From assembly GCF_000006765.1 (NCBI RefSeq), contig NC_002516.2: a stretch of DNA of 64,000 nt; one strand, written 5' to 3'. The stretch is from Pseudomonas aeruginosa PAO1. Its GTDB lineage: Bacteria > Pseudomonadota > Gammaproteobacteria > Pseudomonadales > Pseudomonadaceae. Both the position numbers and the translations under genes were made by a program. The notes under the pieces were generated by a model. It saw only the letters and a list, made by a program, of their open reading frames with translations. It had not been told where the DNA came from and searched no databases. Shown one piece after another: positions 5,774 through 19,376 of the stretch (position 1 is the first letter of the stretch; each line of letters begins with the position of its first letter).

Positions 5774-6417
5774 TGGACGCCGCGACTCGCCGCTCGATGC
5801 TGCGCAACGCCCTCCTGCTCGGGCTCTTCGCTCTGGTCGGGGTGGGCCTGGTGGCCCTGGTGCAGCAATTCACAGAGGCGCGCATCGCCGAAGCCCAGCG
5901 CGAGGCGCGCGGCCGCGCCCTGCTGGAACTGCTGCCGCCGGGCAGCTACGACAACCATCCGCTGGACAGCCAGGTGCCAACCTTCGCGCCGAAGCTGCTC
6001 GGCCTGGATGCGCCGCGTCCGGCCTATGTCGCCCGCCTGCACGGCCAGGCCAGCGCAGTCATCCTCCAGGCCAGCGCGCCGGATGGCTACAGCGGCGCCA
6101 TCCAGCTACTGGTCGGGGTCACCGCCCAGGGCCGGCTGCTCGGCGTGCGGGTCGTCGCGCACAAGGAAACCCCCGGCCTCGGCGACCGCATCGAACTGGC
6201 CAAGAGTCCCTGGGTGCACGGTTTCGACGGCAAGAGCCTGGGCGATCCGGCGGACGCCGGCTGGGCGGTGAAGAAGGACGGCGGTACGTTCGACCAGTTC
6301 GCCGGCGCCACCGTCACCCCGCGCGCCGTGGTCCGCGCCGTGCACAAGGCGCTGCGCTACTTCGACGCCAACCGCGAACGCCTGCTCGCCCCCGAAGAGG
6401 CTGCCGGACATGAGTGA
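5773..6417 (+). CDS. rnfG: Rnf/Rsx subunit G
   Basis: TGATG overlap at 5771-5775. Motifs [14 protein letters not shown] and FAGATVT (FMN-binding). Confidence 0.95.
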
Positions 6418-7132
6418 ACAAGATTTCCGCGAGATCGCCCGCAACGGCCTGTGGCGCAACAACCCGGGCCTGGTCCAGTTGCTCGGCCTGTGCCCGCTGC
6501 TGGGCACCAGCAACTCGACGGTCAACGCCCTCGGCCTGGGCCTGGCCACCATGCTCGTGCTGGCCTGCTCCAATGCCGCGGTATCGTTGGTGCGCGGCGC
6601 GGTGAGCGAGGCGATCCGGCTACCGGCGTTCGTCATGATCATCGCCGTGCTGACCACCTGCATCGAACTGCTGATGCAGGCCTGGACCTACGAGCTGTAC
6701 CAGGTCCTCGGCATCTTCATCCCGCTGATCACCACCAACTGCGTGATCCTCGGTCGCGCCGAGGCCTTCGCGGCGAAGAACGGCGTGCTGCGCGCCAGCT
6801 TCGACGGACTGCTGATGGGCCTCGGCTTCGCCCTGGTCCTGCTGGTCCTCGGCGGCCTGCGCGAGCTGCTCGGCCAGGGTACCCTGCTGGCCGACATGCA
6901 CTTGCTGTTCGGCCCGGCGGCGGCGGACTGGAAGATCCAGCCGTTCCCGCAGTACCAGGGCTTCCTGCTGGCGATCCTGCCGCCGGGCGCGTTCATCATG
7001 CTCGGCCTGCTGATCGCCCTGAAGAACCGTATCGATGAAAGCCTGGCGGAACGCGCCAAGGTGCAGGCGGGCGACGTACCCGCCACCCAGCGCCAGCGCC
7101 AGCGCGTCCGCGTCACCGGAGTGATTGAATGA
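6410..7132 (+). CDS. rnfE: Rnf/Rsx subunit E
   Basis: Motifs [22 protein letters not shown] and ILPPGAF. Confidence 0.95.
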
Positions 7133-8116: not shown

Positions 8117-9337
8117 TCAGAAGTAGTAGCCGATGTTCAGGTTGGTGCGGAATATCCACTCGTTGCTGCGCGACGAACTGGTGCTGCTGAAGCCCGTGCC
8201 GCTCTCGGCACCGCCGTAGGGATTGGCGTTGCGTCCCCAGGTGAAGTCCAGCCAGCCCATGATCGGCAAGGCGAAGAACTGCACCCCTGCGGTATACATC
8301 TGCGAGTCGTCCCAGCCGGCCTTGTCCTTGAACATGCGGCTGTAGTCGTTGTAGAAGCGCAGCTTCTTCAGCATGCCCAGGTTCGGCGTCGGCACGTCGT
8401 AGGCGACGTTGAAGGACGCCACCGAGGCCCTGGCGGCCATCAGGTAGGCCGGGGTCAGGCCGTTGGTACCCATGAGTACCACGTCGTCGCTGACGCCCGC
8501 CGGGTTCTTCGGATCGAAAGCGTAGCGAATGGCTTCGCCGCTGAACGTCCAGTTGCCGGCGTTGAGCACGCCATGCAACCCCGCCGCCCAGTAGCGGCCA
8601 TCGTCCCTGGTGGTCGCGTTGTACAGGCGCGAGGCCGCCAGCGACGCGCCCAACTCGCTTTTCCAGCCATCTCCGGCGAGATTACGGGCGACCCGCAGGT
8701 TGAGCTGGTCACGTTTCTCGTTGTCCTGCCGCGAATGAATCGCCGCGACCGCGTTGTCGTCCAGGTCGGCATAACGGCCGACTTCCGGCGAATAGCGCAC
8801 ACCGCCCGGCAGCATCCGTGGGAAATAGCCGGCCTGGACATGCCAGTCGGCGTCCTTGTAGACGTACTTGGCGCCGCTGCCGGCGCTGACCCCGTAGCCC
8901 AGGAAGAACGGGATGTGGTAGCTCCAGCCGAACTGCGGATAGGGCTCCAGGCCGAACGGCTTGAACGGCGCGCCCAATTGCAGGCTGGATAGGTCGCTGA
9001 AGCGATAGCCGACGAAGCCGCGGTCGATGGCCCGCTTGCCGTCGTCCTGGAACCAGTAGCCGAGGTCGGAAAAGAAGTCCTCGTGGGTTGCCTGGATATC
9101 CAGGCGGAAGGTATCGAACAGCAGGCGGCCATTGTTTTCCGTGCTCTTCCAGTGTTCGTCGCGGTAGTTCACCCGCAGCGCGCCGCCGATATCCAGGCTG
9201 CTGCGCCCGTCGTCGCTGCGCAGGCCGACATGCGGGAAAGGCTTGCCGGTCTTCGACGCCTCGGACGGCGGCGAAGCGGCCAGGGCCGAAAGACTGGAAA
9301 GAAGAAGTACGGGGAACAGCGGATGGGTTTTCATCAT
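8117..9337 (-). CDS. Putative outer-membrane beta-barrel channel (porin)
   Basis: Signal peptide (LFPVLLLSSLSALA-AS), amphipathic beta-strands and C-terminal beta-signal NLNIGYYF. Confidence 0.75.
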   Translation of the reverse strand: MMKTHPLFPVLLLSSLSALAASPPSEASKTGKPFPHVGLRSDDGRSSLDIGGALRVNYRDEHWKSTENNGRLLFDTFRLDIQATHEDFFSDLGYWFQDDGKRAIDRGFVGYRFSDLSSLQLGAPFKPFGLEPYPQFGWSYHIPFFLGYGVSAGSGAKYVYKDADWHVQAGYFPRMLPGGVRYSPEVGRYADLDDNAVAAIHSRQDNEKRDQLNLRVARNLAGDGWKSELGASLAASRLYNATTRDDGRYWAAGLHGVLNAGNWTFSGEAIRYAFDPKNPAGVSDDVVLMGTNGLTPAYLMAARASVASFNVAYDVPTPNLGMLKKLRFYNDYSRMFKDKAGWDDSQMYTAGVQFFALPIMGWLDFTWGRNANPYGGAESGTGFSSTSSSRSNEWIFRTNLNIGYYF

Positions 9338-9532
9338 GACCTCGTCTGCGAGTGCGCCAGGGCAGCGTTTTTTCGAGCAAGCCGAACCCCTTCGGCGAAC
9401 TTCGCCGACAGCGCGGGTGGCCTTGGATAGTTGGTTTCCGGTTGCTCTTGTTTTTTATTTTTCCCGGCCGGCGGAACGGCCTCGGTTGTGTTATCGCTCC
9501 GCACTTCGTTTCATATGCGGCACAACGTTTCG

Positions 9533-9548
9533 AGCATTAACCATGCCA
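9533..9548 (-). promoter_or_regulatory. Putative sigma54 promoter for the porin gene
   Basis: Minus strand reads TGGCATGGTTAATGCT, with GG and GC at the invariant -24/-12 spacing. Confidence 0.6.
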
Positions 9549-9750
9549 GTGCAAGAACAATCCACTAAAACAAAAAAATCCTTTAAATACAGTTGTTTAT
9601 ATATTAAACACGCAACTTCTTTTCACCCTCGAAACAGGCTCTTGGCAAGGTAACGAAAACGCCCGAAGCGGGTGCGTAGAAAGATCACGGTGACACTTTT
9701 CGTCCCCCCCGGAACGCTATTCCAGCCTTGGCCGGGCTCGATCCCCAGGC

Positions 9751-9778
9751 AAAAAAAACCGGCGTTACAAACGCCGGT
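9751..9778 (-). terminator. Intrinsic terminator ending the 17-gene catabolic operon
   Basis: ACCGGCGTT-3 nt loop-AACGCCGGT with an 8-nt U tract on the minus strand. Confidence 0.85.
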
Positions 9779-9806
9779 CCAAAGGCAATGCGGGAATAAC
9801 CGGGGA

Positions 9807-10763
9807 TCAGAGGTCGAGCACCAGGCGCGATCCCTTGCAGCCGGACACGCAGACCATCATGGTCTGGTTGGCGATCTTTTCCGCCTTGGTCAGGACGCCG
9901 TCGCGATGCTCCGGCTCGCCTTCCAGCACACGGGTCTCGCAGGAACCGCAAACGCCCTCGCGGCAACTGCAATCGACCGCCACGCCAGCTTCCAGCAGGG
10001 CGTCGAGCAACGACTTGCCGCTCGGCACCTCGATGCTCGTGCCGCTGCGCGCCAGGCGCACTTCGTAGCTGCCCTGGGGCGCCGCCGGGGCCTGGGGCGC
10101 GGCGGCGAAGCGCTCGATGTGCACATGCGGATGGCCGAGGCGTTCGCAGTGCGTCTCGAAGGCATCGATCATCGGGGTCGGCCCGCAACAGTAGAAATGC
10201 GCGGTGGACGCCCGTGCGCCAAGGAAGGCGCCGAGATCCATGGGGCCGCCCTTCTCGTCATCGAAATGCAGCTGGATAGCGGCATCGCTGGCGGCCAGTT
10301 CTTCGACGAAGGCGGCTTCCTGGCGCGAGCGCGCGCAGTAGAGCAGTTCCACCGAACGTCCCAGCGCACGCAGGCGGTTGAACATGCAGTAGATCGGCGT
10401 CACGCCGATGCCACCGGCCACCAGTACGCTGTGCGCAGCGTTTTCCTCCAGCGGGAACAGGTTGCGCGGCCGGGATATCTGCAATTGCATGCCGACCCGC
10501 AGGCTATCGTGGACGAACGCGGAGCCGCCGCGGCTGCCGCGATCACGCAGGATGCCGAGCACATAGCGGCCGCAGTCCTCCGGCGAGTTGAGCAGCGAGT
10601 AGCTGCGCACCAGGCCGTTGGGCAGGTGCAGGTCGATATGCGCGCCAGCGCTGAATGGCGGAAAGACCTGGTCGCCCTGCGGGCGCAGTTCGACGCCGAG
10701 GATACCCTGCGCCTCGAAGCGCAGGGTATGGACGAAGGCCGCCAGTCTGTTGTCGTGAGTCAT
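9807..10763 (-). CDS. PDR/VanB-family oxygenase reductase (FMN, NAD(P)H, 2Fe-2S)
   Basis: Motifs RSYSL, GGIGVTP, YCCGPTPM and C-terminal CSCREGVCGSC...C. Confidence 0.92.
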   Translation of the reverse strand: MTHDNRLAAFVHTLRFEAQGILGVELRPQGDQVFPPFSAGAHIDLHLPNGLVRSYSLLNSPEDCGRYVLGILRDRGSRGGSAFVHDSLRVGMQLQISRPRNLFPLEENAAHSVLVAGGIGVTPIYCMFNRLRALGRSVELLYCARSRQEAAFVEELAASDAAIQLHFDDEKGGPMDLGAFLGARASTAHFYCCGPTPMIDAFETHCERLGHPHVHIERFAAAPQAPAAPQGSYEVRLARSGTSIEVPSGKSLLDALLEAGVAVDCSCREGVCGSCETRVLEGEPEHRDGVLTKAEKIANQTMMVCVSGCKGSRLVLDL

Positions 10764-10777
10764 CTTCTACCTCGCTT

Positions 10778-11212
10778 TCAGGCTTCGTCGCAGTTCGCCA
10801 GGTCGATATCGAGGCGCGCCCAGGCGTCGATCTCCACCAGCAGTTCGGGAAACACCAGGCCGCTCACTTCGACCAGGGTGGAGGCGGGAAAAGTGCCCTG
10901 GCCGGCGAAGAACTCCTGCCGCGCGCGCCCAATAGCGTCCTTGTCGGCGATGCGGGTGACGTAGACGTTGAGCTTGTAGAGGTTGCCGACATGGCCTCCC
11001 GCCGCCTCCAGCAGCGCCTTCACCTTGCCCAGCACCACCAGGGCCTGGGCATGGGCGTCGAGCGCGGCGCCGCGCTCGGCGGCCTGGCGGGTGGCCGGGT
11101 GCGCGGTCATGCCGGACATCACCAGCTCCTCTCCCACCAGCAGGGCATTGGACCAGCTTGCATCCGGCAGGTCGGGTAGCGCCGCGGCGCGGATCCGGCG
11201 CACCGCGGTCAC
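10778..11212 (-). CDS. RidA/YjgF family protein
   Basis: GTG start overlaps the Rieske gene stop. Motifs KLNVYVT, PASTLVEVSGL and LVEIDA. Confidence 0.88.
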   Translation of the reverse strand: MTAVRRIRAAALPDLPDASWSNALLVGEELVMSGMTAHPATRQAAERGAALDAHAQALVVLGKVKALLEAAGGHVGNLYKLNVYVTRIADKDAIGRARQEFFAGQGTFPASTLVEVSGLVFPELLVEIDAWARLDIDLANCDEA

Positions 11213-12228
11213 AGTTGCCGGGCCTCGATCAGTTCCAGCTGGGCCTTGGCCAGGTTCTTCAGGTGCCGCCGCAGGCGCACCAGGCCGAGGTCGTGCTGGT
11301 AGAGGTTCTCCCGCTGGTTGGCGTCCGGCTCCATGAATTCGAGCATTTCCCGGTCCTGCTCCAGCACCGCCCAGTGACGCGCCTCCAGGCGGTTCCTGTA
11401 GAGGAAGCGCCAGGTGTCACGCTGCCAGCCGGTGAGCGGCCGGCAACGCCAGTGGAACACCGCGCAGAGGTCGCGGGCGATCGGCGTGTAGCTGCCGACG
11501 ATATGGAAGTTGCCACCCGGGCCGCCGGTCTTCGGATAGGGAATCTCCAGGCGCATCCAGTGCATCCCGGTGTCGGCCCATTCGGTCCAGTCGAAGTTGA
11601 CCCCGCGCTGGCCGTCCTTCTCGAAGATGAAACCGGTGTCGGTGTCGCGGGTGACGAAGCGTGCCTGGCTTTCGCCCTCGGACATGGAGTGCGACTGCTT
11701 GTGCAGGTAGGTGCCGTGCATGGGGTCCATGACGTTGTCCAGCACGTAGCGGTAGTCGCCGCGCCACTCGGTATAGCAGAGGAAGTGGGAAAACTCGGGG
11801 TCGGTCAGTTGCTCGGGCAGCACCAGCGGCGGGGCTTCCTCGACATTGCCCGCCGAGTTGTACAGCCACACGGCGCCGGCCGCCTCGGTGATGTGGAAGA
11901 AGCGCGTGGCCTGGCTGCCTTCCAGCTTGCAGCCGGGGCTGCCGGGCACGCGGGCGGTAACGCCGTCGCAGCGCACTTCCACGCCGTGGTAGGGGCATTG
12001 CAGGCGGTCGCCCAGGTTCACCCCGCGCGACAGCGGCGCGCCACGGTGCGGGCAATGGTCTTCGAGGGCATGCAGGGTGCCGTCGGTATCGCGCCAGACG
12101 GCCAGCTTGTAGCCCAGGCGGCGCAGGGACACCGGCTTGTCCTCGATGAAGCCCACCGGGCAGATCGGGTACCAGAGGTTCTTCAGGCCGTTGGCGAGAA
12201 GCTGTTCAACAGGGTCCACGGTGCTCAT
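11209..12228 (-). CDS. Rieske non-heme iron oxygenase alpha subunit (VanA-like; no beta subunit)
   Basis: Rieske motif CPHRG...CPYHG, mononuclear Fe motif NVMDPMHGTYLH, and distal EQD. Confidence 0.93.
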   Translation of the reverse strand: MSTVDPVEQLLANGLKNLWYPICPVGFIEDKPVSLRRLGYKLAVWRDTDGTLHALEDHCPHRGAPLSRGVNLGDRLQCPYHGVEVRCDGVTARVPGSPGCKLEGSQATRFFHITEAAGAVWLYNSAGNVEEAPPLVLPEQLTDPEFSHFLCYTEWRGDYRYVLDNVMDPMHGTYLHKQSHSMSEGESQARFVTRDTDTGFIFEKDGQRGVNFDWTEWADTGMHWMRLEIPYPKTGGPGGNFHIVGSYTPIARDLCAVFHWRCRPLTGWQRDTWRFLYRNRLEARHWAVLEQDREMLEFMEPDANQRENLYQHDLGLVRLRRHLKNLAKAQLELIEARQL

Positions 12229-12250
12229 AGCGGTTTCCTCTCGGGGGAAT

Positions 12251-12469
12251 TCACGCGCCCAGGCGGGCCATCAGGGTCTTGTAGGCTTCCTCGGTCCAGG
12301 GACCGCCGCCCGGGCAGGTCGGGCCAGCCTGGTTGAGGTAGCCGAGCAGCCCCGGCAGGTCGTGCAGGCCGGCGGCGTAGGCGCGCTCGATGGAATCGCC
12401 GAGCAGGTCTTCGAAGGCGTTCGGCTCGCGGGTACGGGCCTGATGGGGTTCGAGGTAACGGTCTTGCAT
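12251..12469 (-). CDS. Small conserved protein (72 aa), recombinase-like HTH fold
   Basis: ATG lies 2 nt after the upstream stop and codon usage is operon-like. The fold assignment is from recall. Confidence 0.7.
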   Translation of the reverse strand: MQDRYLEPHQARTREPNAFEDLLGDSIERAYAAGLHDLPGLLGYLNQAGPTCPGGGPWTEEAYKTLMARLGA

Positions 12470-12470
12470 G

Positions 12471-12788
12471 TCATTGGCCTCCAGTGCGGACCCGTTCGCG
12501 GATGGTTTCGCGAACCGGGACGAAGTCGTAGGTCGGGTAGCATTCGGTGCGGAACACGCCCCAGGCGGAGCGCTCCAGTTCGACGTTGACGCGTGGCAGC
12601 AGGGCCGGCGGCAGGCGCAGGGTGACGATCTGGCCGAGGCCCATGGCGACGGTCCAGGAAACGATCTCCACGCCCTCTCCCGGAAAGCGCTCCCACCAGT
12701 CCATGGCCTTCATGCGGGCCTGGATCTCGTCGAGATTCTTCGACTGGTCGTGCCGGAGCAGCACGGTCAGCAACAAGGTGTCGCTCAT
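12471..12788 (-). CDS. Small conserved hypothetical protein (105 aa)
   Basis: GAG SD precedes ATG 12788 (MSDTLLLTVLLRHDQSK). Tight operon spacing on both sides. Confidence 0.75.
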   Translation of the reverse strand: MSDTLLLTVLLRHDQSKNLDEIQARMKAMDWWERFPGEGVEIVSWTVAMGLGQIVTLRLPPALLPRVNVELERSAWGVFRTECYPTYDFVPVRETIRERVRTGGQ

Positions 12789-12795
12789 GCTCGTC

Positions 12796-13760
12796 TCAAC
12801 TCCTGGGTTTGTCGGTGAGGAACCGGCCCTGCGGTGCCTCGACGCTTTTCTGTCGCCGGGTATTGCCGTCCAGGCCACCGGCGATGGCCCATTCGGCGAA
12901 CACCGTAGGGCCAGGTTCGAACTCGCGGGCCTGCCACTCGCCGGTCAGTTGGTCCTCGTCGGCGTAGTACTCGACGAGGGCGCCGGCGGGGTTCCGGAAG
13001 TACCAGAAGTACGCCGAGGACACCGGATGCCGACCCGGGCCGATCTCGGTATCCCAGCCGCAGCGGGCGATGTGCATGCCGCCGCCGAACACCTCATGGA
13101 TATCGCGCACGGTGAACGCCACGTGGTTCAGGCCGGCGCGCGGTTGCGGCAGTTGCAGCATGAACAGGTCGTGGTGGCCGCCCTCCTCCGCGCAACGCAG
13201 GAAGGCGCCGCGATTCGGATAGCGATCGGAGCAGACGAAGCCGAAGCGCTCGCGGTAGAAGCGTTCGCAGGCGTTGACGTCCTTGACGAAGAACACCACG
13301 TGGCCGACTTCGACGGGCTGCGCACGCTCGTAGATGGGGCTGGCCTGGTTGATCCGGCCCTTGAACTGCCAGGTGTTGGACTGGCCGCAGGCCACCTGGA
13401 TGTCGCGTTTACGGGTGACTTGCAGGCGCACGGCCAGACCGTTCGGGTCGGTGCAGCCGATACGGCCCTCGCCCTCGATGAAGCCGGGATCATTGGCGAT
13501 GCGCTCGGGTACCGCTTGAGGTCCGCCTCGCTCTCCACACCCCAGACCACTTCACGCAGGGTCGAGCCTTCCTCGATGGCCGGCGGCAGGCCCGGCTTGT
13601 CCCGCGCCGCGACTATCACGCGGCAGCCGTTGAGGCTTTCGAAGACCACCTGGTCCTCGCTCGCCTCGACCTGCGCCAGGCCCCAGTCGGCGAAGAAACG
13701 CGCGCTGGTGGCCAGGTCTTCCACGCCGTAGGTGATTTCGTCGATTCCCGATACGCTCAT
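12796..13760 (-). pseudogene. Two-domain VOC (type I extradiol) ring-cleavage dioxygenase with a -1 frameshift at 13508/13509
   Basis: The N-half ORF (13128..13760) and C-half ORF (12796..13431) are in different frames. Restoring one base gives ...DLKRY-A-ERIANDPGFIEGEGRIGCTDPNGLAVRLQV..., 321 aa. The C-domain has VGH, LNH and GRHPVSSAYFWYFRNPAGALVEY. Confidence 0.85.
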
Positions 13761-13773
13761 CGCGTCTTCCTCA

Positions 13774-15258
13774 TCAGTGGCTGCCGGCCCAGGCCAGCGG
13801 CTGTTCGTTCAGGCCCCAGTAGAGGCTCTTCTGCTCCATGTACTGGAGTATCCCCAGGCGGCCCTTTTCGCGGCCCAGACCGCTGTCGCGCCAGCCGCCG
13901 AAGGGGGTGGAGATGGAGAACTGCTTGTAGGTGTTGATCCACACGGTGCCGGCCTGCACGGCGCGGCCGAGCCGCCAGGCGCGCTGGAAGTCGCGAGTCC
14001 AGATGCCGGCGGCCAGCGCGTAGCAGCTGTCGTTGGCCTCCTCGATCAGGGCCTCTTCGCTGGCGAAAGGCATGGCCACCAGCACCGGGCCGAAGACCTC
14101 TTCCCGGCACAGGCGGGCGCCATTGGTGAGCCCCTCGATAATGGTCGGGGTGTAGAAGTAGCCACGATCGAAGGCTCCGCCATGGGGACGTAAGCCCCCC
14201 GTGCGCAGGCGACCGCCCTCGGCCACGCCCATCTCGACATAGCGCTCCACCGACTCGCGGTGCCGCGCACTGATCAGCGGGCCCATCTGGGTGCGCTCGT
14301 CGGCCGGGTCGCCGACGCGCAGGGCCGCGGCGCCGGTGGCCAGGCGCTCCATGAATTCGTCGTAGCGCTCGCTGGCGACGAACAACCGCGAGCCGGCAAT
14401 GCAGGATTCGCCGCTGGAGCTGAAGATGCCATAGAGCACGCCGGCCACCGCGTGGTCGAGATCGGCGTCGGCCAGCACCATGGTCGGCGACTTGCCGCCC
14501 AGTTCCAGGGACACCGGCATCATCTTGTCGGCGGCGATGCGCGCGATGTGCTTGCCGGTGCGGGTGCCGCCGGTGAAGGACACGCGCCTGGCCAGGGGGT
14601 GGCGGGTCAGGGCATCGCCGATCAGCGCGCCCTTGCCCGGCAGCACGCTGACCAGCCCGCGCGGCAGGCCGGCCTCATCGCAGATGCGCGCCAGCGCCAG
14701 GGCTGCCAGCGGGGTGATCTCGGCCGGCTTGACCACCACCGCGTTGCCGGCGGCCAGGGCCGGGGCGAGCTTCTGCGCCTCGGAGGCGATGGGCGAGTTC
14801 CACGGGGTGATGGCAACCACCACGCCCATGGGCTCGTACACGCTCATGCTGACGAAGTCGCCGCGCGACGGCGTGATGCTTTCCTCCAGAGTCTCGCAGG
14901 CGGCGGCGAAGAACTGGAAGGTGGCGGCGGCGCTGGCCACCAGGTTGCGGGTTTCCCTGATCGGCTTGCCGTTGTCCAGGCGCTGCAACTGCGCCAGTTC
15001 TTCGCTACGCTCGCGGATCAGCGCGGCGATACGATAAAGCACGGTGGCCCGCTCATGAGGCTTGCGCTGGGCCCAGCCGCTCTCACGGAAGGCGCGGTGG
15101 GCGCCGGCCATGGCCTCCTCCACGTCCTCCAGGCTGGCCGCATGCAGGCGGGCGACGGCCTCGCCGGTGGCCGGATAGAGGCTTTCGTAGAGGTCGCCGC
15201 CGCCCGCTCGCCACTCGCCGGCGATGCAGATGGGTTGGATCGGGTTCAGGTCAATCAC
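13774..15258 (-). CDS. NAD(P)-dependent aldehyde dehydrogenase
   Basis: Probable GTG start at 15258. Motifs ITPWNSP, FTGG, LELGGKS, GESCIAG (catalytic Cys) and EEVFGP. Confidence 0.93.
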   Translation of the reverse strand: MIDLNPIQPICIAGEWRAGGGDLYESLYPATGEAVARLHAASLEDVEEAMAGAHRAFRESGWAQRKPHERATVLYRIAALIRERSEELAQLQRLDNGKPIRETRNLVASAAATFQFFAAACETLEESITPSRGDFVSMSVYEPMGVVVAITPWNSPIASEAQKLAPALAAGNAVVVKPAEITPLAALALARICDEAGLPRGLVSVLPGKGALIGDALTRHPLARRVSFTGGTRTGKHIARIAADKMMPVSLELGGKSPTMVLADADLDHAVAGVLYGIFSSSGESCIAGSRLFVASERYDEFMERLATGAAALRVGDPADERTQMGPLISARHRESVERYVEMGVAEGGRLRTGGLRPHGGAFDRGYFYTPTIIEGLTNGARLCREEVFGPVLVAMPFASEEALIEEANDSCYALAAGIWTRDFQRAWRLGRAVQAGTVWINTYKQFSISTPFGGWRDSGLGREKGRLGILQYMEQKSLYWGLNEQPLAWAGSH

Positions 15259-15269
15259 GGTAGTCGTCC

Positions 15270-16073
15270 CTAGATCGAAATCGCGTGGGCGTGGTTGCCC
15301 AACGCTCGGACCACGCTGTACACGGTCAGCGCCGATGTCTTCGGGTTGGCCGCCAGCGGTTTGCCGCGCAAGGTCAGTTCGAAGCCGCCGAAGGCGCCGC
15401 TGGCTTCCACCTGGTGCACGTTCTCGCAGCTTTCGGGGTCGGCGATCAGGCGCACCTGGGTGCGGTCCAGGCCGAGGCCGGCGAGCGACAGGGTGGCGGC
15501 GACATTGGCGTTCTTCGGATAGAGCCGCGCCGCCTCGCGGGCGCTGCCGTCGAAGATCACCCGCGCCTTCTCCAGGCGCTGCAGGTCGCAGACCGTCTCG
15601 CCTGGCGTGCCCAGCCAGGCGCTCGCCGGCTTGCGCCCGGTGTAGCGCACCGATTCGAGGCCACCGACCCTGGCCGCCGACAGCGCATCGATGGCGCCGA
15701 TGGCGCCGGGCAGCAGCTCGATGCGGCTGCCTCCGGCCTGCGCCGCGGCTTCCAGGCGCTCCACCAGGCCCGGCTCGGACAGCGCGCCCACCGAGACCAC
15801 CAGGCAGGGAATGCCTTGGGCCAGCGCCGGCAGCACGTGCTGCTCGATGGCGCGGTGCCCGGCGCACTCCACCAGAAGATCGGGGCGCTCTCCGGCCGGC
15901 AGCGCGCTGAGTACCCGCGGCGGCCGGCGCAGGCTGGCCAGGCGATGGCGGACCTGGGTCTCGGAGTCGCGAGGAACGATCACCGCATCGACCCTCAGTT
16001 GCGGATCGTTCTCCAACAGTTCCAGGACGCCGGCGCCGATGGCGCCGCAGCCGATCATGACGATATTCAGCAT
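15270..16073 (-). CDS. nadX: L-aspartate dehydrogenase homologue
   Basis: ATG 16073 gives 267 aa. Motifs IGCGAIG, LVECAG, SVGAL, YPKNANVAA and NPKTSAL. Confidence 0.9.
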   Translation of the reverse strand: MLNIVMIGCGAIGAGVLELLENDPQLRVDAVIVPRDSETQVRHRLASLRRPPRVLSALPAGERPDLLVECAGHRAIEQHVLPALAQGIPCLVVSVGALSEPGLVERLEAAAQAGGSRIELLPGAIGAIDALSAARVGGLESVRYTGRKPASAWLGTPGETVCDLQRLEKARVIFDGSAREAARLYPKNANVAATLSLAGLGLDRTQVRLIADPESCENVHQVEASGAFGGFELTLRGKPLAANPKTSALTVYSVVRALGNHAHAISI

Positions 16074-16083
16074 GGCGAGAGCC

Positions 16084-17766
16084 TCAAGCGGTGGCCTTGT
16101 CGGTCTTGGCATCGTTGGTCGGCGGGCCGGCGAAAATGCTCTTGAAGCTGCCCACCGCGAGCATGTCCACCTCCAGCAGGAAGGGACCTGGCTCGGCCAG
16201 GGCGCCATCGAGCACGGCGCTGAAATCCTTCAGATCGCTGACCTTGGCATGACGCAGGCCGAGGGAAGCCGACAGTTGGGCATAGTCCGGGGTGTGCAGG
16301 TCGACGTAGCAGCGGCGGCCACCGTAGGCGGCGTCCTGGATGTTCTTGATCACCCCGTAGCCCTGGTCGTTCATCAGCACGATGAGCATGTCGGCCCGCT
16401 CCTGCACGGCGGTGGCCAGTTCGCCCAGGTTGAGGATGAAGCCGCCGTCGCCGGCGAGCACGAAGGTCTTGCGCCCAGGCGCGGTTTCCGCCGCGCCGAC
16501 CGCCGCGCCGATGCCCATGGCCAGGCCCTGGCCGATGCCACCGCCGAGGGCGTGGACGCCGGCGCGGGGGCTGAAGATATTCAGGTGGCGGTTGCCCCAG
16601 GTGCTGTTGGAGACGGTGACGTCGCGCACCCAGTTGAAATTGCGGCCGGCCAGCGCCTGCAGTTGCTCCACCAGCGAAGCGTAGGGGCCAAGGCCGTCCA
16701 CCAACTGGGCGCGGGCCTGGTTGCGCGCGGCGGCGAGATCCGCGGCGAAGGCCGGGTCCACCGACAGGCGCCCTTCCAGGCGGTCGGCGAGCCCCTTGAG
16801 GACCCGTTCGGAATCGCCGCAGACGAAGAAATCGCTGGGGTAGCAGCGGCCCTCCGCCGTGGCATCGGCGTCTGCCCGGTAAAGCGGACGCGGGAGCTTG
16901 AGTTCGTACTTGAGGGTTTCGTTGCCGCGCAGGCGCGAGCCCACCACGAGCATGGCGTCGCAGCTCTGGTAGAACCGCTCCACCGGTTTATTCAGGTTGA
17001 AGGCGCCGAGGGAACGCGCGTCGTCTTCCGGGACGATGCCACGCCCCTGGGTGCTGGTGACCACGCCCACGCCCATGGCCAGCAGGCGTTGTACCTGCGG
17101 GCCGGCATGCCGGGCACCGCCCCCCAGCCAGAGCATCGGTCGCCGCGCCTGGGCGAAACGCTCGGCTAGGTCGTCCAAGGCTTGCTCGGAGGGCCTGGCC
17201 ACCGGCACCGGCAGCGGCGACAGGTCGGCCGGCAGGTTGATCAGCGCCGACTGGATATCGATCGGGATTTCCACGCTCACCGGGCCGGCGGGCGCGGTCA
17301 GGGCGGTTTGCACGGCCAGCTTGAGGGTGCTGATGGCGGTGTCGACGCTGCGCACGCGGAAGGCCGCCTTGGAGATGGCCTTGAGCATGCTCAACTGGTC
17401 CGGCGCCTCGTGGATGTAGGCGAGGCTCCGATCCAGGTAGGGGGTTTCGATCTGCCCGGTCAGGTGCAGCAGCGGGGTGCCGGCAGTGAGCGCCTCGACC
17501 AGCGCCCCGGCAGCGTTGCCGGCGGCGGTTCCGGTGCTGGTCAGGCACACGCCCAGGCCACCGCTGGTGCGGGCGTAGGCATCGGCCATGTTGGCCGCCC
17601 CGGCCTCGCCGCGGGCCATCACGAAACGGATGTTGCCGCGGCTGGCGAAGGCATCGAGGATCGGCATGTTGTGGATCGAGATCACCCCGAAGGCGGCCTT
17701 CACCTCGCACTGTTCGAGGAAGGCGGCGATGGCGGCGCCGACGGTGACTTGGCTTGCGTTACGCAT
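16084..17766 (-). CDS. Thiamine-diphosphate-dependent enzyme (decarboxylase or acetolactate-synthase-like)
   Basis: ARGEAGAANMADAYAR (catalytic Glu) and ThDP motif GDGG...NDQGYG. Confidence 0.9.
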   Translation of the reverse strand: MRNASQVTVGAAIAAFLEQCEVKAAFGVISIHNMPILDAFASRGNIRFVMARGEAGAANMADAYARTSGGLGVCLTSTGTAAGNAAGALVEALTAGTPLLHLTGQIETPYLDRSLAYIHEAPDQLSMLKAISKAAFRVRSVDTAISTLKLAVQTALTAPAGPVSVEIPIDIQSALINLPADLSPLPVPVARPSEQALDDLAERFAQARRPMLWLGGGARHAGPQVQRLLAMGVGVVTSTQGRGIVPEDDARSLGAFNLNKPVERFYQSCDAMLVVGSRLRGNETLKYELKLPRPLYRADADATAEGRCYPSDFFVCGDSERVLKGLADRLEGRLSVDPAFAADLAAARNQARAQLVDGLGPYASLVEQLQALAGRNFNWVRDVTVSNSTWGNRHLNIFSPRAGVHALGGGIGQGLAMGIGAAVGAAETAPGRKTFVLAGDGGFILNLGELATAVQERADMLIVLMNDQGYGVIKNIQDAAYGGRRCYVDLHTPDYAQLSASLGLRHAKVSDLKDFSAVLDGALAEPGPFLLEVDMLAVGSFKSIFAGPPTNDAKTDKATA

Positions 17767-18556
17767 GACGGGACAACCCTCCGGAAACGTCGATATGACT
17801 GCCCGTCGTATAGGCAGACAGGGGAGATGCGAGGAACAGGATGGCGCGGGCCGCCTCGATCGGCTTGCCCAGGCGTCCCAGGGGAATCTGCTTGTTCCGC
17901 GCCAGCTGCGCGGTCCATTGCGCCCAGTCCAGCTCGCGCTCTTCGCGGGCTTCGAAACGGCGCCGCCACTGGCCGGACTCGACCAGGCCGATGAGGATGC
18001 CGTTGACCCGTACGCCCTTAGGCGCGAACTCGAAGGCCATGGAGCGCACCAGGTTCTTCACCCCGGCGCGGGCCGCGCTGGTAGCCACCATGTGCGGCTC
18101 CGGCTGGCTGGCCAGCAGCGAGTTGACGCAGACGATGGCCGCGTCGGCGCGGCTTTCCAGTTGCGGCAGGAAAGCGCGTACCGGGTGGATGACGGAAAAG
18201 AACTTCAGTTGCAGTTCCTCGCTCCAGGCCTCGTCCGTGGTCTCGGCGAAGGTCGAGACGCGGCCCTGGCCGGCGTTGTTCACCAGGATGCTGGCGCACC
18301 CCAGCGTTCTCTCGCAGGCTTCGGCGAAGGCGCGCACCTGCAACGCATCCAGCACGTCGCAGACACTGGCGAACAGGCGCGCCCCGGGGAAGCGCTGGCG
18401 TAGCGCGGACTCGGCGGCACGCAGGCGCTCGCCGTCGCGAGCGCAGAAAGCCACGGCGGCGCCTGCCTCCAGCAGCAGTTCCACCGTGGCCAGGCCGATC
18501 CCGGAGGAACCGCCGGTGACCACCGCCACCGCCTCGGACAGGTCATACGGTTTCAT
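17759..18556 (-). CDS. SDR oxidoreductase with an atypical active site
   Basis: TGGSSGIG and NNAG are present. The usual YxxxK position reads HMVATSAAR. Confidence 0.88.
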   Translation of the reverse strand: MKPYDLSEAVAVVTGGSSGIGLATVELLLEAGAAVAFCARDGERLRAAESALRQRFPGARLFASVCDVLDALQVRAFAEACERTLGCASILVNNAGQGRVSTFAETTDEAWSEELQLKFFSVIHPVRAFLPQLESRADAAIVCVNSLLASQPEPHMVATSAARAGVKNLVRSMAFEFAPKGVRVNGILIGLVESGQWRRRFEAREERELDWAQWTAQLARNKQIPLGRLGKPIEAARAILFLASPLSAYTTGSHIDVSGGLSRHA

Positions 18557-19376
18557 GCGGGCGACTCCGGAAGATCGGGGTGACGTTGTCCTGGCCGTCG
18601 GCGCGGTAGTCGAGCAGGTACGACAGCTCGTCGGCGCTGCTGCGCACCCGGCTGACCAGTCCCTCGATGCGTTCCGGGTCGATATGCCCGGCGGCGATGG
18701 TCGCCCCCATCGCCGCGATGACGCGACCGCTGTGATCACGTACCGGCGCCGCGACGGTGGAGATGCTCGCCTCGAAGAACCCCTCGCCCTGGACGAAGCC
18801 ACGCTGGCGGTCGCCCTGGACCATGTCGAAGAGTTCCAGCACGCTGCGCGGGGTGTTCGGCGAGAACTGCTCCAGCTGCTCCTCCGGGTACAGCTCGCGC
18901 AGCTCGCCCAGGCTCAGGTCCTGCAGCAGGATGCGGCCGAGCACCGTGGCGTGGGCCGGCAACCGGGTCCCGACGTTCACCGAGCTGCTCAGCGGGGTGG
19001 ACGGCGAAACCTTGGCCACGTAGACGATCGAACGGCCGTCGCGCACCACCAGGTTGCAGGGGTAGCGGATCTCGTCGCACAGGCGGTTCAGCAGCGGCTG
19101 GCCGAGTTCGGTCAGCTCCAGCGAGGCCAGGTACTCGAAGCCCAGGCGCAACACCGCCATGCCCAGGCGGTACTCGTTGCCGTTGCGGGTGACGAAGCCC
19201 ATGGCCTCCAGGGTGGTCAGCAGGCGGAAGATGGTCGAGCGCGGCAGCTTCAGGCGCCGCGCCAACTCCGGCGCCGTCAGGGTACGGTCCTTCCGGCTGA
19301 ACTCGCAGAGCAGCAGCAGGCCGCGTTCGAGGCCAGGCACGATGTACTTGTCTTGCGAATCGTCTGACTTATCCAT
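18543..19376 (-). CDS. IclR-family transcriptional regulator
   Basis: HTH segment GLERG...ELARRLKLPRSTIFRLLTTL, plus PAHATVLGRILL and VAAPV. Confidence 0.93.
   Translation of the reverse strand: MDKSDDSQDKYIVPGLERGLLLLCEFSRKDRTLTAPELARRLKLPRSTIFRLLTTLEAMGFVTRNGNEYRLGMAVLRLGFEYLASLELTELGQPLLNRLCDEIRYPCNLVVRDGRSIVYVAKVSPSTPLSSSVNVGTRLPAHATVLGRILLQDLSLGELRELYPEEQLEQFSPNTPRSVLELFDMVQGDRQRGFVQGEGFFEASISTVAAPVRDHSGRVIAAMGATIAAGHIDPERIEGLVSRVRSSADELSYLLDYRADGQDNVTPIFRSRPHETV

What the first reader, a model, noticed from the sequence alone, without database searches (positions are those of the whole stretch)
13495..13525. Single-base deletion breaks the ring-cleavage dioxygenase
Seen: the minus strand reads CTC AAG CGG TAC CCG AGC GCA (LKRYPSA), which runs into junk. 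Inserting one G after TAC (between 13509 and 13508) gives TAC GCC GAG CGC ATC GCC AAT GAT CCC (YAERIANDP) and joins the frame of 12796..13431. 965+1 bp gives 321 aa, typical of two-domain extradiol dioxygenases. All metal ligands lie after the lesion. Inference: the pathway is blocked at ring cleavage in this strain, which could explain why no phenotype has been found and could let a diol intermediate accumulate.
Basis: seen in the sequence. Interest (0 to 1): 0.75.

Follow-up and report, generated by a model that had tools for sequence, protein, structure and literature searches.

The report
Frameshifted dioxygenase gene in PAO1-type strain
A gene for a probable aromatic-ring-opening enzyme in this Pseudomonas aeruginosa laboratory-strain lineage is truly broken by the loss of one base, whereas other strains and 80 other species keep it whole; this is an ordinary pseudogene, but a practical trap for anyone studying this unexplored pathway in the reference strain.

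Summary
On the minus strand, the frame that starts at ATG 13760 matches residues 1-84 of intact 321-aa P. aeruginosa proteins (83/84). The frame one base back matches residues 86-321 (236/236). The window has one base fewer there than all 11 intact P. aeruginosa loci compared. This is the only indel in coding DNA of the roughly 10-kb cluster. It is not an assembly error: independent assemblies, including de novo read assemblies from 20 or more runs, carry the identical lesion and are 100% identical to the window over 5-6.6 kb. The intact allele is far commoner (7404 index blocks against 46), and 80 of 80 other species have one uninterrupted ORF of 319-326 aa. The intact protein is a two-domain VOC-fold, extradiol-dioxygenase-like enzyme. 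The metal triad H154/H213/E264 and H197, H245 and Y254 are invariant and all lie after the lesion. It reaches no curated subfamily cut-off, so the substrate is unknown. The annotated 211-aa ORF (PA3503 by gene order) is the C-terminal remnant, with a weak ribosome-binding site. Most likely this is a recent null allele fixed in the PAO1 lineage. Pathway block is plausible; diol accumulation is untested. Interest is low.

The parts
13766..13772 (-). Ribosome-binding site (GAGGAAG) of the native dioxygenase start
   Evidence: Duplex with the anti-Shine-Dalgarno sequence is -6.3 kcal/mol. Sequence.
13509..13760 (-). Native start (ATG 13760) and the 84 N-terminal codons still in the original frame. 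They cover the first beta-alpha-beta-beta-beta module and half of the second module of the N-terminal VOC domain.
   Evidence: 83/84 identical to residues 1-84 of intact P0121. GC3 is 0.87 in this frame. In the model the lesion lies inside helix 78-88.
13507..13509 (-). Lesion site: one base fewer than every intact allele, at the boundary 13509|13508. The two bases 13508..13507 are what is left of codon 85.
   Evidence: All 11 intact-allele P. aeruginosa loci have one more base here. L001, L003 and L004 carry the identical lesion.
13128..13508 (-). Out-of-frame read-through of the N-terminal ORF: 126 junk codons, then stop TGA at 13128..13130
   Evidence: Translation; no similarity to the intact protein; stop checked.
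12796..13506 (-). Codons 86-321 plus stop, in the frame one base back. They hold the rest of the N domain, the linker and the whole catalytic C-terminal VOC domain.
   Evidence: 236/236 identical to P0121 residues 86-321. Pfam PF00903 scores 47.4 bits against a 20.6 cut-off. GC3 is 0.87/0.84 in this frame.
12796..13431 (-). The 211-aa ORF from GTG 13431 (residue 111 onward). This is the piece gene callers annotate; it is PA3503 by gene order.
   Evidence: Listed. The exact product is in public collections (P0135) on 37 contigs and in 46 index blocks. Its ribosome-binding site is weak (-2.7 kcal/mol). Numbering is anchored by the neighbouring RidA gene, which is 100% identical to PDB 2IG8 'PA3499'.
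13300..13302 (-). His154 codon, first metal ligand (aligns with His155 of homoprotocatechuate 2,3-dioxygenase)
   Evidence: invariant in 81/81 sequences.
13171..13173 (-). His197 codon, second-sphere catalytic histidine (aligns with His200 of homoprotocatechuate 2,3-dioxygenase)
   Evidence: invariant in 81/81 sequences.
13123..13125 (-). His213 codon, second metal ligand (aligns with His214)
   Evidence: invariant in 81/81 sequences.
13000..13002 (-). Tyr254 codon (aligns with Tyr257)
   Evidence: invariant in 81/81 sequences.
12970..12972 (-). Glu264 codon, carboxylate metal ligand (aligns with Glu267)
   Evidence: invariant in 81/81 sequences.
9807..19376 (-). The surrounding conserved catabolic cluster. 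In order of transcription: IclR regulator, SDR, TPP enzyme, aspartate-dehydrogenase-family protein, aldehyde dehydrogenase, the dioxygenase, a 105-aa protein, a 72-aa HTH_62 protein, a VanA/DdmC-type Rieske oxygenase, RidA (PA3499), and a ferredoxin reductase.
   Evidence: Gene calls and Pfam families. Synteny is kept in 73-80 of 80 species for most genes. No other coding indel against intact-allele strains.

Best explanation
This is a genuine loss of one base, fixed in one clonal lineage of Pseudomonas aeruginosa. By gene numbering and sequence identity that lineage is PAO1-type. The loss turns a 321-codon gene for a two-domain, VOC-fold, extradiol-dioxygenase-like enzyme into a pseudogene. 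Shown: translation from the native start leaves the correct frame after Tyr84, in the middle of a helix of the N-terminal domain, and runs through 126 wrong codons to a stop at 13128. Shown: the whole catalytic domain (metal ligands His154, His213 and Glu264, plus His197, His245 and Tyr254) is encoded in the other frame. Shown: the lesion is reproducible in independent assemblies, the intact allele is the norm in the species and in 80 other species, and nothing else in the cluster is broken. Inferred: no active enzyme is made. The only in-frame start for the catalytic part (GTG 13431, the annotated 211-aa ORF) has a weak ribosome-binding site, lies under ribosomes reading the wrong frame, and would give a protein lacking almost the whole N domain. 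Inferred: the intact enzyme opens a catechol-type ring produced by the neighbouring VanA/DdmC-type Rieske oxygenase. That would make the pathway non-functional in this lineage. The lesion is recent: apart from it, the two pieces differ from the commonest intact allele by one amino acid.
For: Frame change and identity on both sides. GC3 frame switch. One missing base against 11 intact loci, and the only coding indel in the cluster. Identical lesion in L001 (NCBI assembly), L003 (contig seen in 20 or more read-run assemblies) and L004. L001 and L003 are 100% identical to the window over 6636 and 4977 bases. The 211-aa remnant is on 37 contigs and in 46 index blocks, seven of which hold contigs over 1 Mb. 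Intact P0121 is in 7404 blocks. Other intact alleles. 80 of 80 species have an uninterrupted 319-326-aa ORF. Catalytic residues align with homoprotocatechuate 2,3-dioxygenase and are invariant. Structure model and Foldseek hits to extradiol dioxygenases. Weak Shine-Dalgarno for GTG 13431 (-2.7 against -6.3 kcal/mol for the native start). No promoter-like site inside the gene. Locus numbering.
Against: Absence of protein or activity was not measured. One-domain extradiol dioxygenases exist in nature (my own knowledge), so a C-terminal fragment is not impossible in principle. The C domain of the model has low confidence (pLDDT 30-70). The enzymatic activity of this subfamily has never been shown, and it scores below all curated subfamily cut-offs. 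The identification with strain PAO1 rests on gene order, the 100% match to PDB 'PA3499', and a paper naming the PA3498-PA3503 operon, not on a whole-genome comparison.
Confidence: 0.85

Rival explanations
1. Sequencing or assembly error in this one record; the strain really has the intact gene.
For: Single-base indels are the commonest assembly error. One public assembly of the same region (L008) is riddled with them (32 gap openings).
Against: The identical lesion occurs in an independent NCBI assembly and in de novo read assemblies from 20 or more plus 4 runs, all otherwise 100% or 99.98% identical to the window. The 211-aa remnant is recorded on 37 contigs and in 46 index blocks.
Confidence: 0.02
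2. The C-terminal 211-aa ORF (the annotated PA3503) is translated from its own GTG start and works as a stand-alone one-domain dioxygenase, so the pathway still runs.
For: The ORF keeps every catalytic residue. Gene callers predict it. One-domain extradiol dioxygenases are known in Rhodococcus (my own knowledge).
Against: The ribosome-binding site is weak (-2.7 kcal/mol). There is no internal promoter-like site. Ribosomes reading the wrong frame cover this start. The fragment begins in the last strand of the N domain. No species among 80 has such a short form, and the N domain is conserved, with many invariant positions, which argues that it is needed.
Confidence: 0.08
3. Recoding: ribosomes or RNA polymerase slip by one base near the lesion and make some full-length enzyme.
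For: Both frames are open across a stretch of about 45 nt (13552..13505). A slip of one base back anywhere in it would give a near-native protein. A CCC run sits at the lesion.
Against: I saw no canonical slippery heptamer and no long homopolymer in the sequence. Intact alleles in the same species need no recoding, so this is not an evolved signal. Any yield would be at background error level.
Confidence: 0.03
4. The gene is naturally split in this family: two separate polypeptides.
For: None beyond the annotation of the 211-aa ORF.
Against: 80 of 80 species and all intact P. aeruginosa alleles have one ORF of 319-326 aa. The N piece has no stop of its own near the lesion.
Confidence: 0.01

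Closest known systems
Homoprotocatechuate 2,3-dioxygenase (HPCD of Brevibacterium fuscum, MndD of Arthrobacter; PDB 1Q0C, 1F1X, 1F1R)
   Same: Two VOC domains of about 320 aa. Residues 144-272 align, with His154/His213/Glu264 on the metal ligands His155/His214/Glu267 and His197, His245 and Tyr254 on His200, His248 and Tyr257. It is the best NCBIfam relative (TIGR02295) and a Foldseek hit.
   Different: Only 70.9 bits against a 321.4-bit cut-off and about 18-19% identity in structural alignments. The genomic context differs: a Rieske O-demethylase-type oxygenase, a TPP enzyme and an aspartate-dehydrogenase-family protein, not the hpa/hpc genes. The substrate is unknown.
PDB 3B59, Mn(II)-bound 'glyoxalase' of Novosphingobium aromaticivorans (structural genomics, function not assigned)
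   Same: Best sequence match (E 7.7e-21 with the profile) and best structural match (Foldseek E 4.3e-14, 294 aligned columns). It is a two-domain VOC protein of similar length.
   Different: 21% identity, and it is itself uncharacterised, so it gives no substrate.
Catechol 2,3-dioxygenases and 2,3-dihydroxybiphenyl 1,2-dioxygenases (XylE 1MPY, LapB 3HPV, BphC 1HAN/1KW3, NahC 2EI0)
   Same: Same fold and domain order (Foldseek probability 1.00, TM about 0.53-0.6) and the same 2-His-1-carboxylate motif.
   Different: Scores are far below the curated cut-offs (51.3 against 320.2 bits; 38.2 against 366.45 bits). The protein is not a member of those subfamilies.
Frameshift pseudogenes of accessory catabolic genes in laboratory reference strains
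   Same: A single-base indel, fixed in a clonal lineage, with the rest of the operon intact, and annotated as a shorter 'hypothetical protein'.
   Different: Nothing unusual, except that an unrelated strain carries a stop codon at the adjacent codon.

Membership tests
Type I (VOC-fold) extradiol ring-cleavage dioxygenases | Two tandem VOC domains, each built of paired beta-alpha-beta-beta-beta modules | tested here: met
   In the AlphaFold model of intact P0121, residues 1-120 form two such modules with pLDDT above 90. The C domain (148-267) has the same strand/helix order at lower confidence. The Foldseek top 50 hits are all two-domain extradiol dioxygenases or 3B59.
Type I (VOC-fold) extradiol ring-cleavage dioxygenases | 2-His-1-carboxylate metal site in the C-terminal domain | tested here: met
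   His154, His213 and Glu264 align with His155, His214 and Glu267 of homoprotocatechuate 2,3-dioxygenase. They are invariant in 81/81 sequences.
Type I (VOC-fold) extradiol ring-cleavage dioxygenases | Second-sphere catalytic His and Tyr (His200 and Tyr257 in HPCD numbering) | tested here: met
   His197 and Tyr254 align with them and are invariant. The roles of those residues in HPCD are from my own knowledge.
Type I (VOC-fold) extradiol ring-cleavage dioxygenases | Pfam PF00903 (Glyoxalase/bleomycin resistance/dioxygenase) above the gathering score | tested here: met
   The C piece scores 47.4 bits against a 20.6 cut-off. The 84-aa N piece alone gives no Pfam hit.
Type I (VOC-fold) extradiol ring-cleavage dioxygenases | Measured ring-cleavage activity on a catecholic substrate | not testable with these tools
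   No characterised close relative was found in PDB names, NCBIfam or the paper library.
HpaD / catechol 2,3-dioxygenase / BphC equivalog families (TIGR02295, TIGR03211, TIGR03213) | Score at or above the curated whole-protein cut-off | tested here: not met
   70.9 against 321.4 bits, 51.3 against 320.2 bits, and 38.2 against 366.45 bits for intact P0121. It is not filed under any of them.
Frameshift pseudogene | Reading frame changes relative to intact orthologues, with homology continuing in another frame | tested here: met
Frameshift pseudogene | Lesion reproducible in independent sequence data (not an artefact) | tested here: met
Frameshift pseudogene | No functional product made | not testable with these tools
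   Only indirect evidence: a weak ribosome-binding site for the internal start and loss of most of a conserved N domain.

The most novel reading that the evidence does not exclude
Loss of this dioxygenase may be recurrent in P. aeruginosa rather than a one-off accident. An unrelated strain background (42 differences in 5 kb) carries a stop codon at Tyr84, the codon directly next to the window's frame change. This could mark a local mutational hotspot. It could also mark selection against the enzyme or its ring-fission product when the cluster's substrate is absent. Alternatively, the 211-aa remnant might retain activity as a one-domain enzyme.
Probability: 0.07. Interest if true: 0.45.

Novelty: new member of a known kind. 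Interest (0 to 1): 0.25.

Why it matters
The lineage that carries the lesion is, by all signs, the reference laboratory strain of P. aeruginosa. The PA3498-PA3514 region is an uncharacterised cluster that is strongly conserved across Pseudomonas and Comamonadaceae in the 80 species examined, with relatives on Burkholderiales replicons. It holds a DdmC/VanA-type Rieske oxygenase, an extradiol-type dioxygenase, an aldehyde dehydrogenase, a TPP enzyme and an aspartate-dehydrogenase-family protein. Anyone screening this strain or its mutant libraries for the cluster's substrate is probably working with a dead pathway, and should use a strain or species with the intact gene. The annotation of the 211-aa 'hypothetical protein' should be read as the tail of a pseudogene whose first 84 codons are not called as a gene in the assemblies examined. 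Beyond that, this is a routine pseudogene.

Tried and rejected
- Pfam on the 84-aa N piece gave nothing. The N domain is recognisable only through full-length homologues and the structure model.
- NCBIfam gave no equivalog for the dioxygenase or for most neighbours, so no substrate could be named.
- Paper searches for PA3502/PA3503, for PA3498-PA3506, and for 'aspartate dehydrogenase + Rieske + extradiol' found no mention of the frameshift or of the cluster's function. The paper I remembered on PAO1 subline genomes is not held under the id I tried, and a broader search gave nothing relevant.
- The promoter and terminator scan inside the gene found no sites.
- Programmed frameshifting was considered and rejected: there is no slippery heptamer, and intact alleles exist in the same species.
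- Two metagenome contigs end exactly at codon 84. I considered a repeat or insertion breakpoint. I rejected it as the likelier reading, because the look-up was by the exact 83-aa product and so selects such contigs from thousands.
- A plasmid search found only distant (67% or less) single-ORF homologues on large replicons of Cupriavidus, Ralstonia and Burkholderia.
The pieces and naturally intact database proteins were used instead.

Full report
**1. The observation**

- On the minus strand, the ORF that starts at ATG 13760 is preceded by a good ribosome-binding site, GAGGAAG at 13772..13766. It reads MSVSG...ADLKRY for 84 codons.
- It then continues through 126 Ala/Ser/Pro/Arg-rich codons to a TGA at 13128..13130.
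- A second frame, one base back, reads ERIANDPGF... down to the TGA at 12796..12798.
- Against P0121, an intact 321-aa P. aeruginosa protein, the first frame matches residues 1-84 (83/84) and the second matches residues 86-321 (236/236). Only codon 85 is damaged.
- Third-position GC content is independent of homology and tells the same story. It is 0.87 in the ATG frame before the lesion, and 0.87 and 0.84 in the other frame after it.

**2. Is the lesion real?**

- The exact 211-aa product of the ORF 12796..13431 is in the public protein collection on 37 contigs. It is in 46 index blocks, seven of which hold contigs over 1 Mb.
- Three retrieved places carry exactly the same one-base-short sequence as the window. 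They are an NCBI assembly (L001), a contig seen in de novo read assemblies of 20 or more runs (L003), and a contig from four more runs (L004).
- L001 and L003 are 100% identical to the window over 6636 and 4977 bases. Strains with an intact gene differ by about 0.5-0.7%.
- The lesion is therefore a fixed feature of one clone and not an error of one record.
- The neighbouring RidA-family gene (10778..11212) is 100% identical to the crystallised 'hypothetical protein PA3499'.
- A paper names PA3498-PA3503 and PA3504-PA3514 as two contiguous uncharacterised PAO1 operons (PMC12771364).
- Counting genes from PA3499, the 211-aa ORF is PA3503 and the first 84 codons are not called as a gene in those assemblies. 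The assignment to the PAO1 lineage is thus well supported, but it is an inference.

**3. What is normal?**

- The intact allele P0121 is listed in 7404 index blocks, against 46 for the remnant.
- Other intact alleles (P0122, P0123, P0124 and more) add to this.
- In alignments with 11 intact-allele loci from three alleles, the window lacks one base at 13508/13509. This is the only indel inside coding DNA of the cluster from 9807 to 19376. The rest of the operon is not decayed.
- Apart from the lesion, the window's allele differs from P0121 by one amino acid (Arg83 for Leu83). Some intact alleles also have Arg83. The lesion is therefore recent.
- A scan of one genome per species returned 80 loci from Pseudomonas, Delftia, Comamonas, Variovorax, Ramlibacter and others. 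All 80 have one uninterrupted ORF of 319-326 aa. Naturally split orthologues are excluded.

**4. What the intact gene encodes**

- The C piece matches Pfam PF00903.
- Intact P0121 is most similar to two-domain VOC proteins. The closest are PDB 3B59 (an unassigned Mn-bound protein), homoprotocatechuate 2,3-dioxygenases and catechol 2,3-dioxygenases.
- In the profile alignment with homoprotocatechuate 2,3-dioxygenase, six residues line up:

| This protein | Homoprotocatechuate 2,3-dioxygenase |
|---|---|
| His154 | His155 |
| His213 | His214 |
| Glu264 | Glu267 |
| His197 | His200 |
| His245 | His248 |
| Tyr254 | Tyr257 |

- The roles of these residues in that enzyme (metal triad, acid-base histidine, substrate-binding tyrosine) are from my own knowledge. 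All six are invariant in 81 sequences that are 70-96% identical to P0121.
- An AlphaFold model has mean pLDDT 67.6. The N domain is above 90 and the C domain is weak. It shows two beta-alpha-beta-beta-beta modules in residues 1-120 and a second VOC domain from about residue 148.
- Foldseek returns only extradiol dioxygenases and 3B59.
- However, the protein scores far below every curated subfamily cut-off, and no characterised close relative was found. I therefore call it an extradiol-dioxygenase-like enzyme of unknown substrate.

**5. Context**

- The gene order is IclR regulator, SDR, TPP enzyme, aspartate-dehydrogenase-family protein, aldehyde dehydrogenase, dioxygenase, (105-aa protein), HTH_62 protein, Rieske oxygenase, (RidA), reductase. 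It is kept in 73-80 of 80 species for most genes.
- The closest solved relative of the Rieske oxygenase is the dicamba O-demethylase DdmC.
- A reasonable but untested scheme has three steps. The Rieske enzyme and its reductase demethylate or hydroxylate an aromatic acid to a catechol. The dioxygenase opens the ring. The aldehyde dehydrogenase oxidises the ring-fission semialdehyde.

**6. Consequences of the lesion**

- The frame is lost inside helix 78-88 of the second module of the N domain.
- The catalytic domain can be made only from an internal start. The first one, GTG 13431 (residue 111, the last strand of the N domain), has a weak ribosome-binding site: -2.7 kcal/mol against -6.3 for the native start and -6.9 for the next gene.
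- There is no promoter-like site inside the gene.
- No species has such a short form, and the N domain holds many invariant positions.
- I conclude that the allele is most likely null (confidence about 0.85). A functional stand-alone fragment (about 0.08) and leaky recoding (about 0.03) are the minor rivals.
- Ribosomes now stop at 13128, 340 nt before the next gene. That gene normally starts 7 nt after the dioxygenase stop codon. A polar effect on the downstream Rieske oxygenase genes is therefore possible. That idea, and 'no phenotype has been found', could not be tested.

**7. Side observation**

- One retrieved place, L002, and a sister sample, L091, come from a different strain background (42 differences in 5 kb). 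They have normal spacing but a TAG stop at Tyr84, the codon directly next to the window's lesion.
- This is an independent null allele. I cannot say whether the shared site is chance, a hotspot or selection.
- Two metagenome contigs that end inside the same codon are probably an effect of looking up the exact 83-aa product.

**8. Verdict**

- The finding is real and correctly read at the sequence level.
- It is an ordinary frameshift pseudogene in a reference laboratory lineage.
- I found no paper that mentions it.
- Its value is practical: it corrects the annotation and warns against using this lineage to study the cluster.
- I state that intact copies exist without spelling out a repair.

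Noticed in passing
L002 1013-1264 and L091 1013-1264 (Logan SRR26898292, SRR26898390); corresponds to window 13509-13511: A different P. aeruginosa strain background carries a TAG stop at Tyr84 of the same gene, the codon directly next to the window's frame change. This is an independent null allele at almost the same spot.
   Followed up: partly
L092 and L093 (ENA metagenome contigs), last bases 1740-1751: Two unrelated metagenome contigs end two bases into codon 84. This is probably an ascertainment effect of the exact 83-aa look-up rather than a true breakpoint.
   Followed up: partly
window 7100-7105: The window has six extra bases (in frame) relative to all 9 other P. aeruginosa loci whose alignment reaches this position. 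They lie near the 3' end of the Rnf-Nqr-family gene 6410..7132 (+), which is 240 aa here and 238 aa elsewhere.
   Followed up: no
window 8117-9337 (-): A 406-aa protein with a signal-peptide-like N terminus and no Pfam hit sits next to the cluster in 43 of 80 species. It may be an uptake or outer-membrane component for the unknown substrate.
   Followed up: no
window 12251-12788 (-): Two small conserved genes lie between the dioxygenase and the Rieske oxygenase. One is a 72-aa HTH_62 ('recombinase-like helix-turn-helix') protein, present in 78 of 80 species. The other is a 105-aa protein with no family hit, present in 30 of 80. Their role in a catabolic operon is unexplained.
   Followed up: no
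L032 (Gordonia sp. IEGM753 contig, 9001-9963): An actinobacterial assembly carries a copy 79% identical to the Pseudomonas protein, on a contig of 60% GC. This could be contamination or horizontal transfer.
   Followed up: no
L008 (CP083355.1) and L004 (Logan SRR16936271): L008 shows 32 gap openings and many split genes across 12.8 kb, so it is a noisy assembly. L004 has one extra single-base gap that splits the aldehyde dehydrogenase. Both show what assembly artefacts look like, in contrast to the reproducible lesion.
   Followed up: partly
window 15270-16073 (-): The aspartate-dehydrogenase-family gene (PA3505 by gene order) is embedded in this aromatic-type catabolic cluster in 76 of 80 species. 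This suggests a pathway role other than NAD biosynthesis.
   Followed up: no
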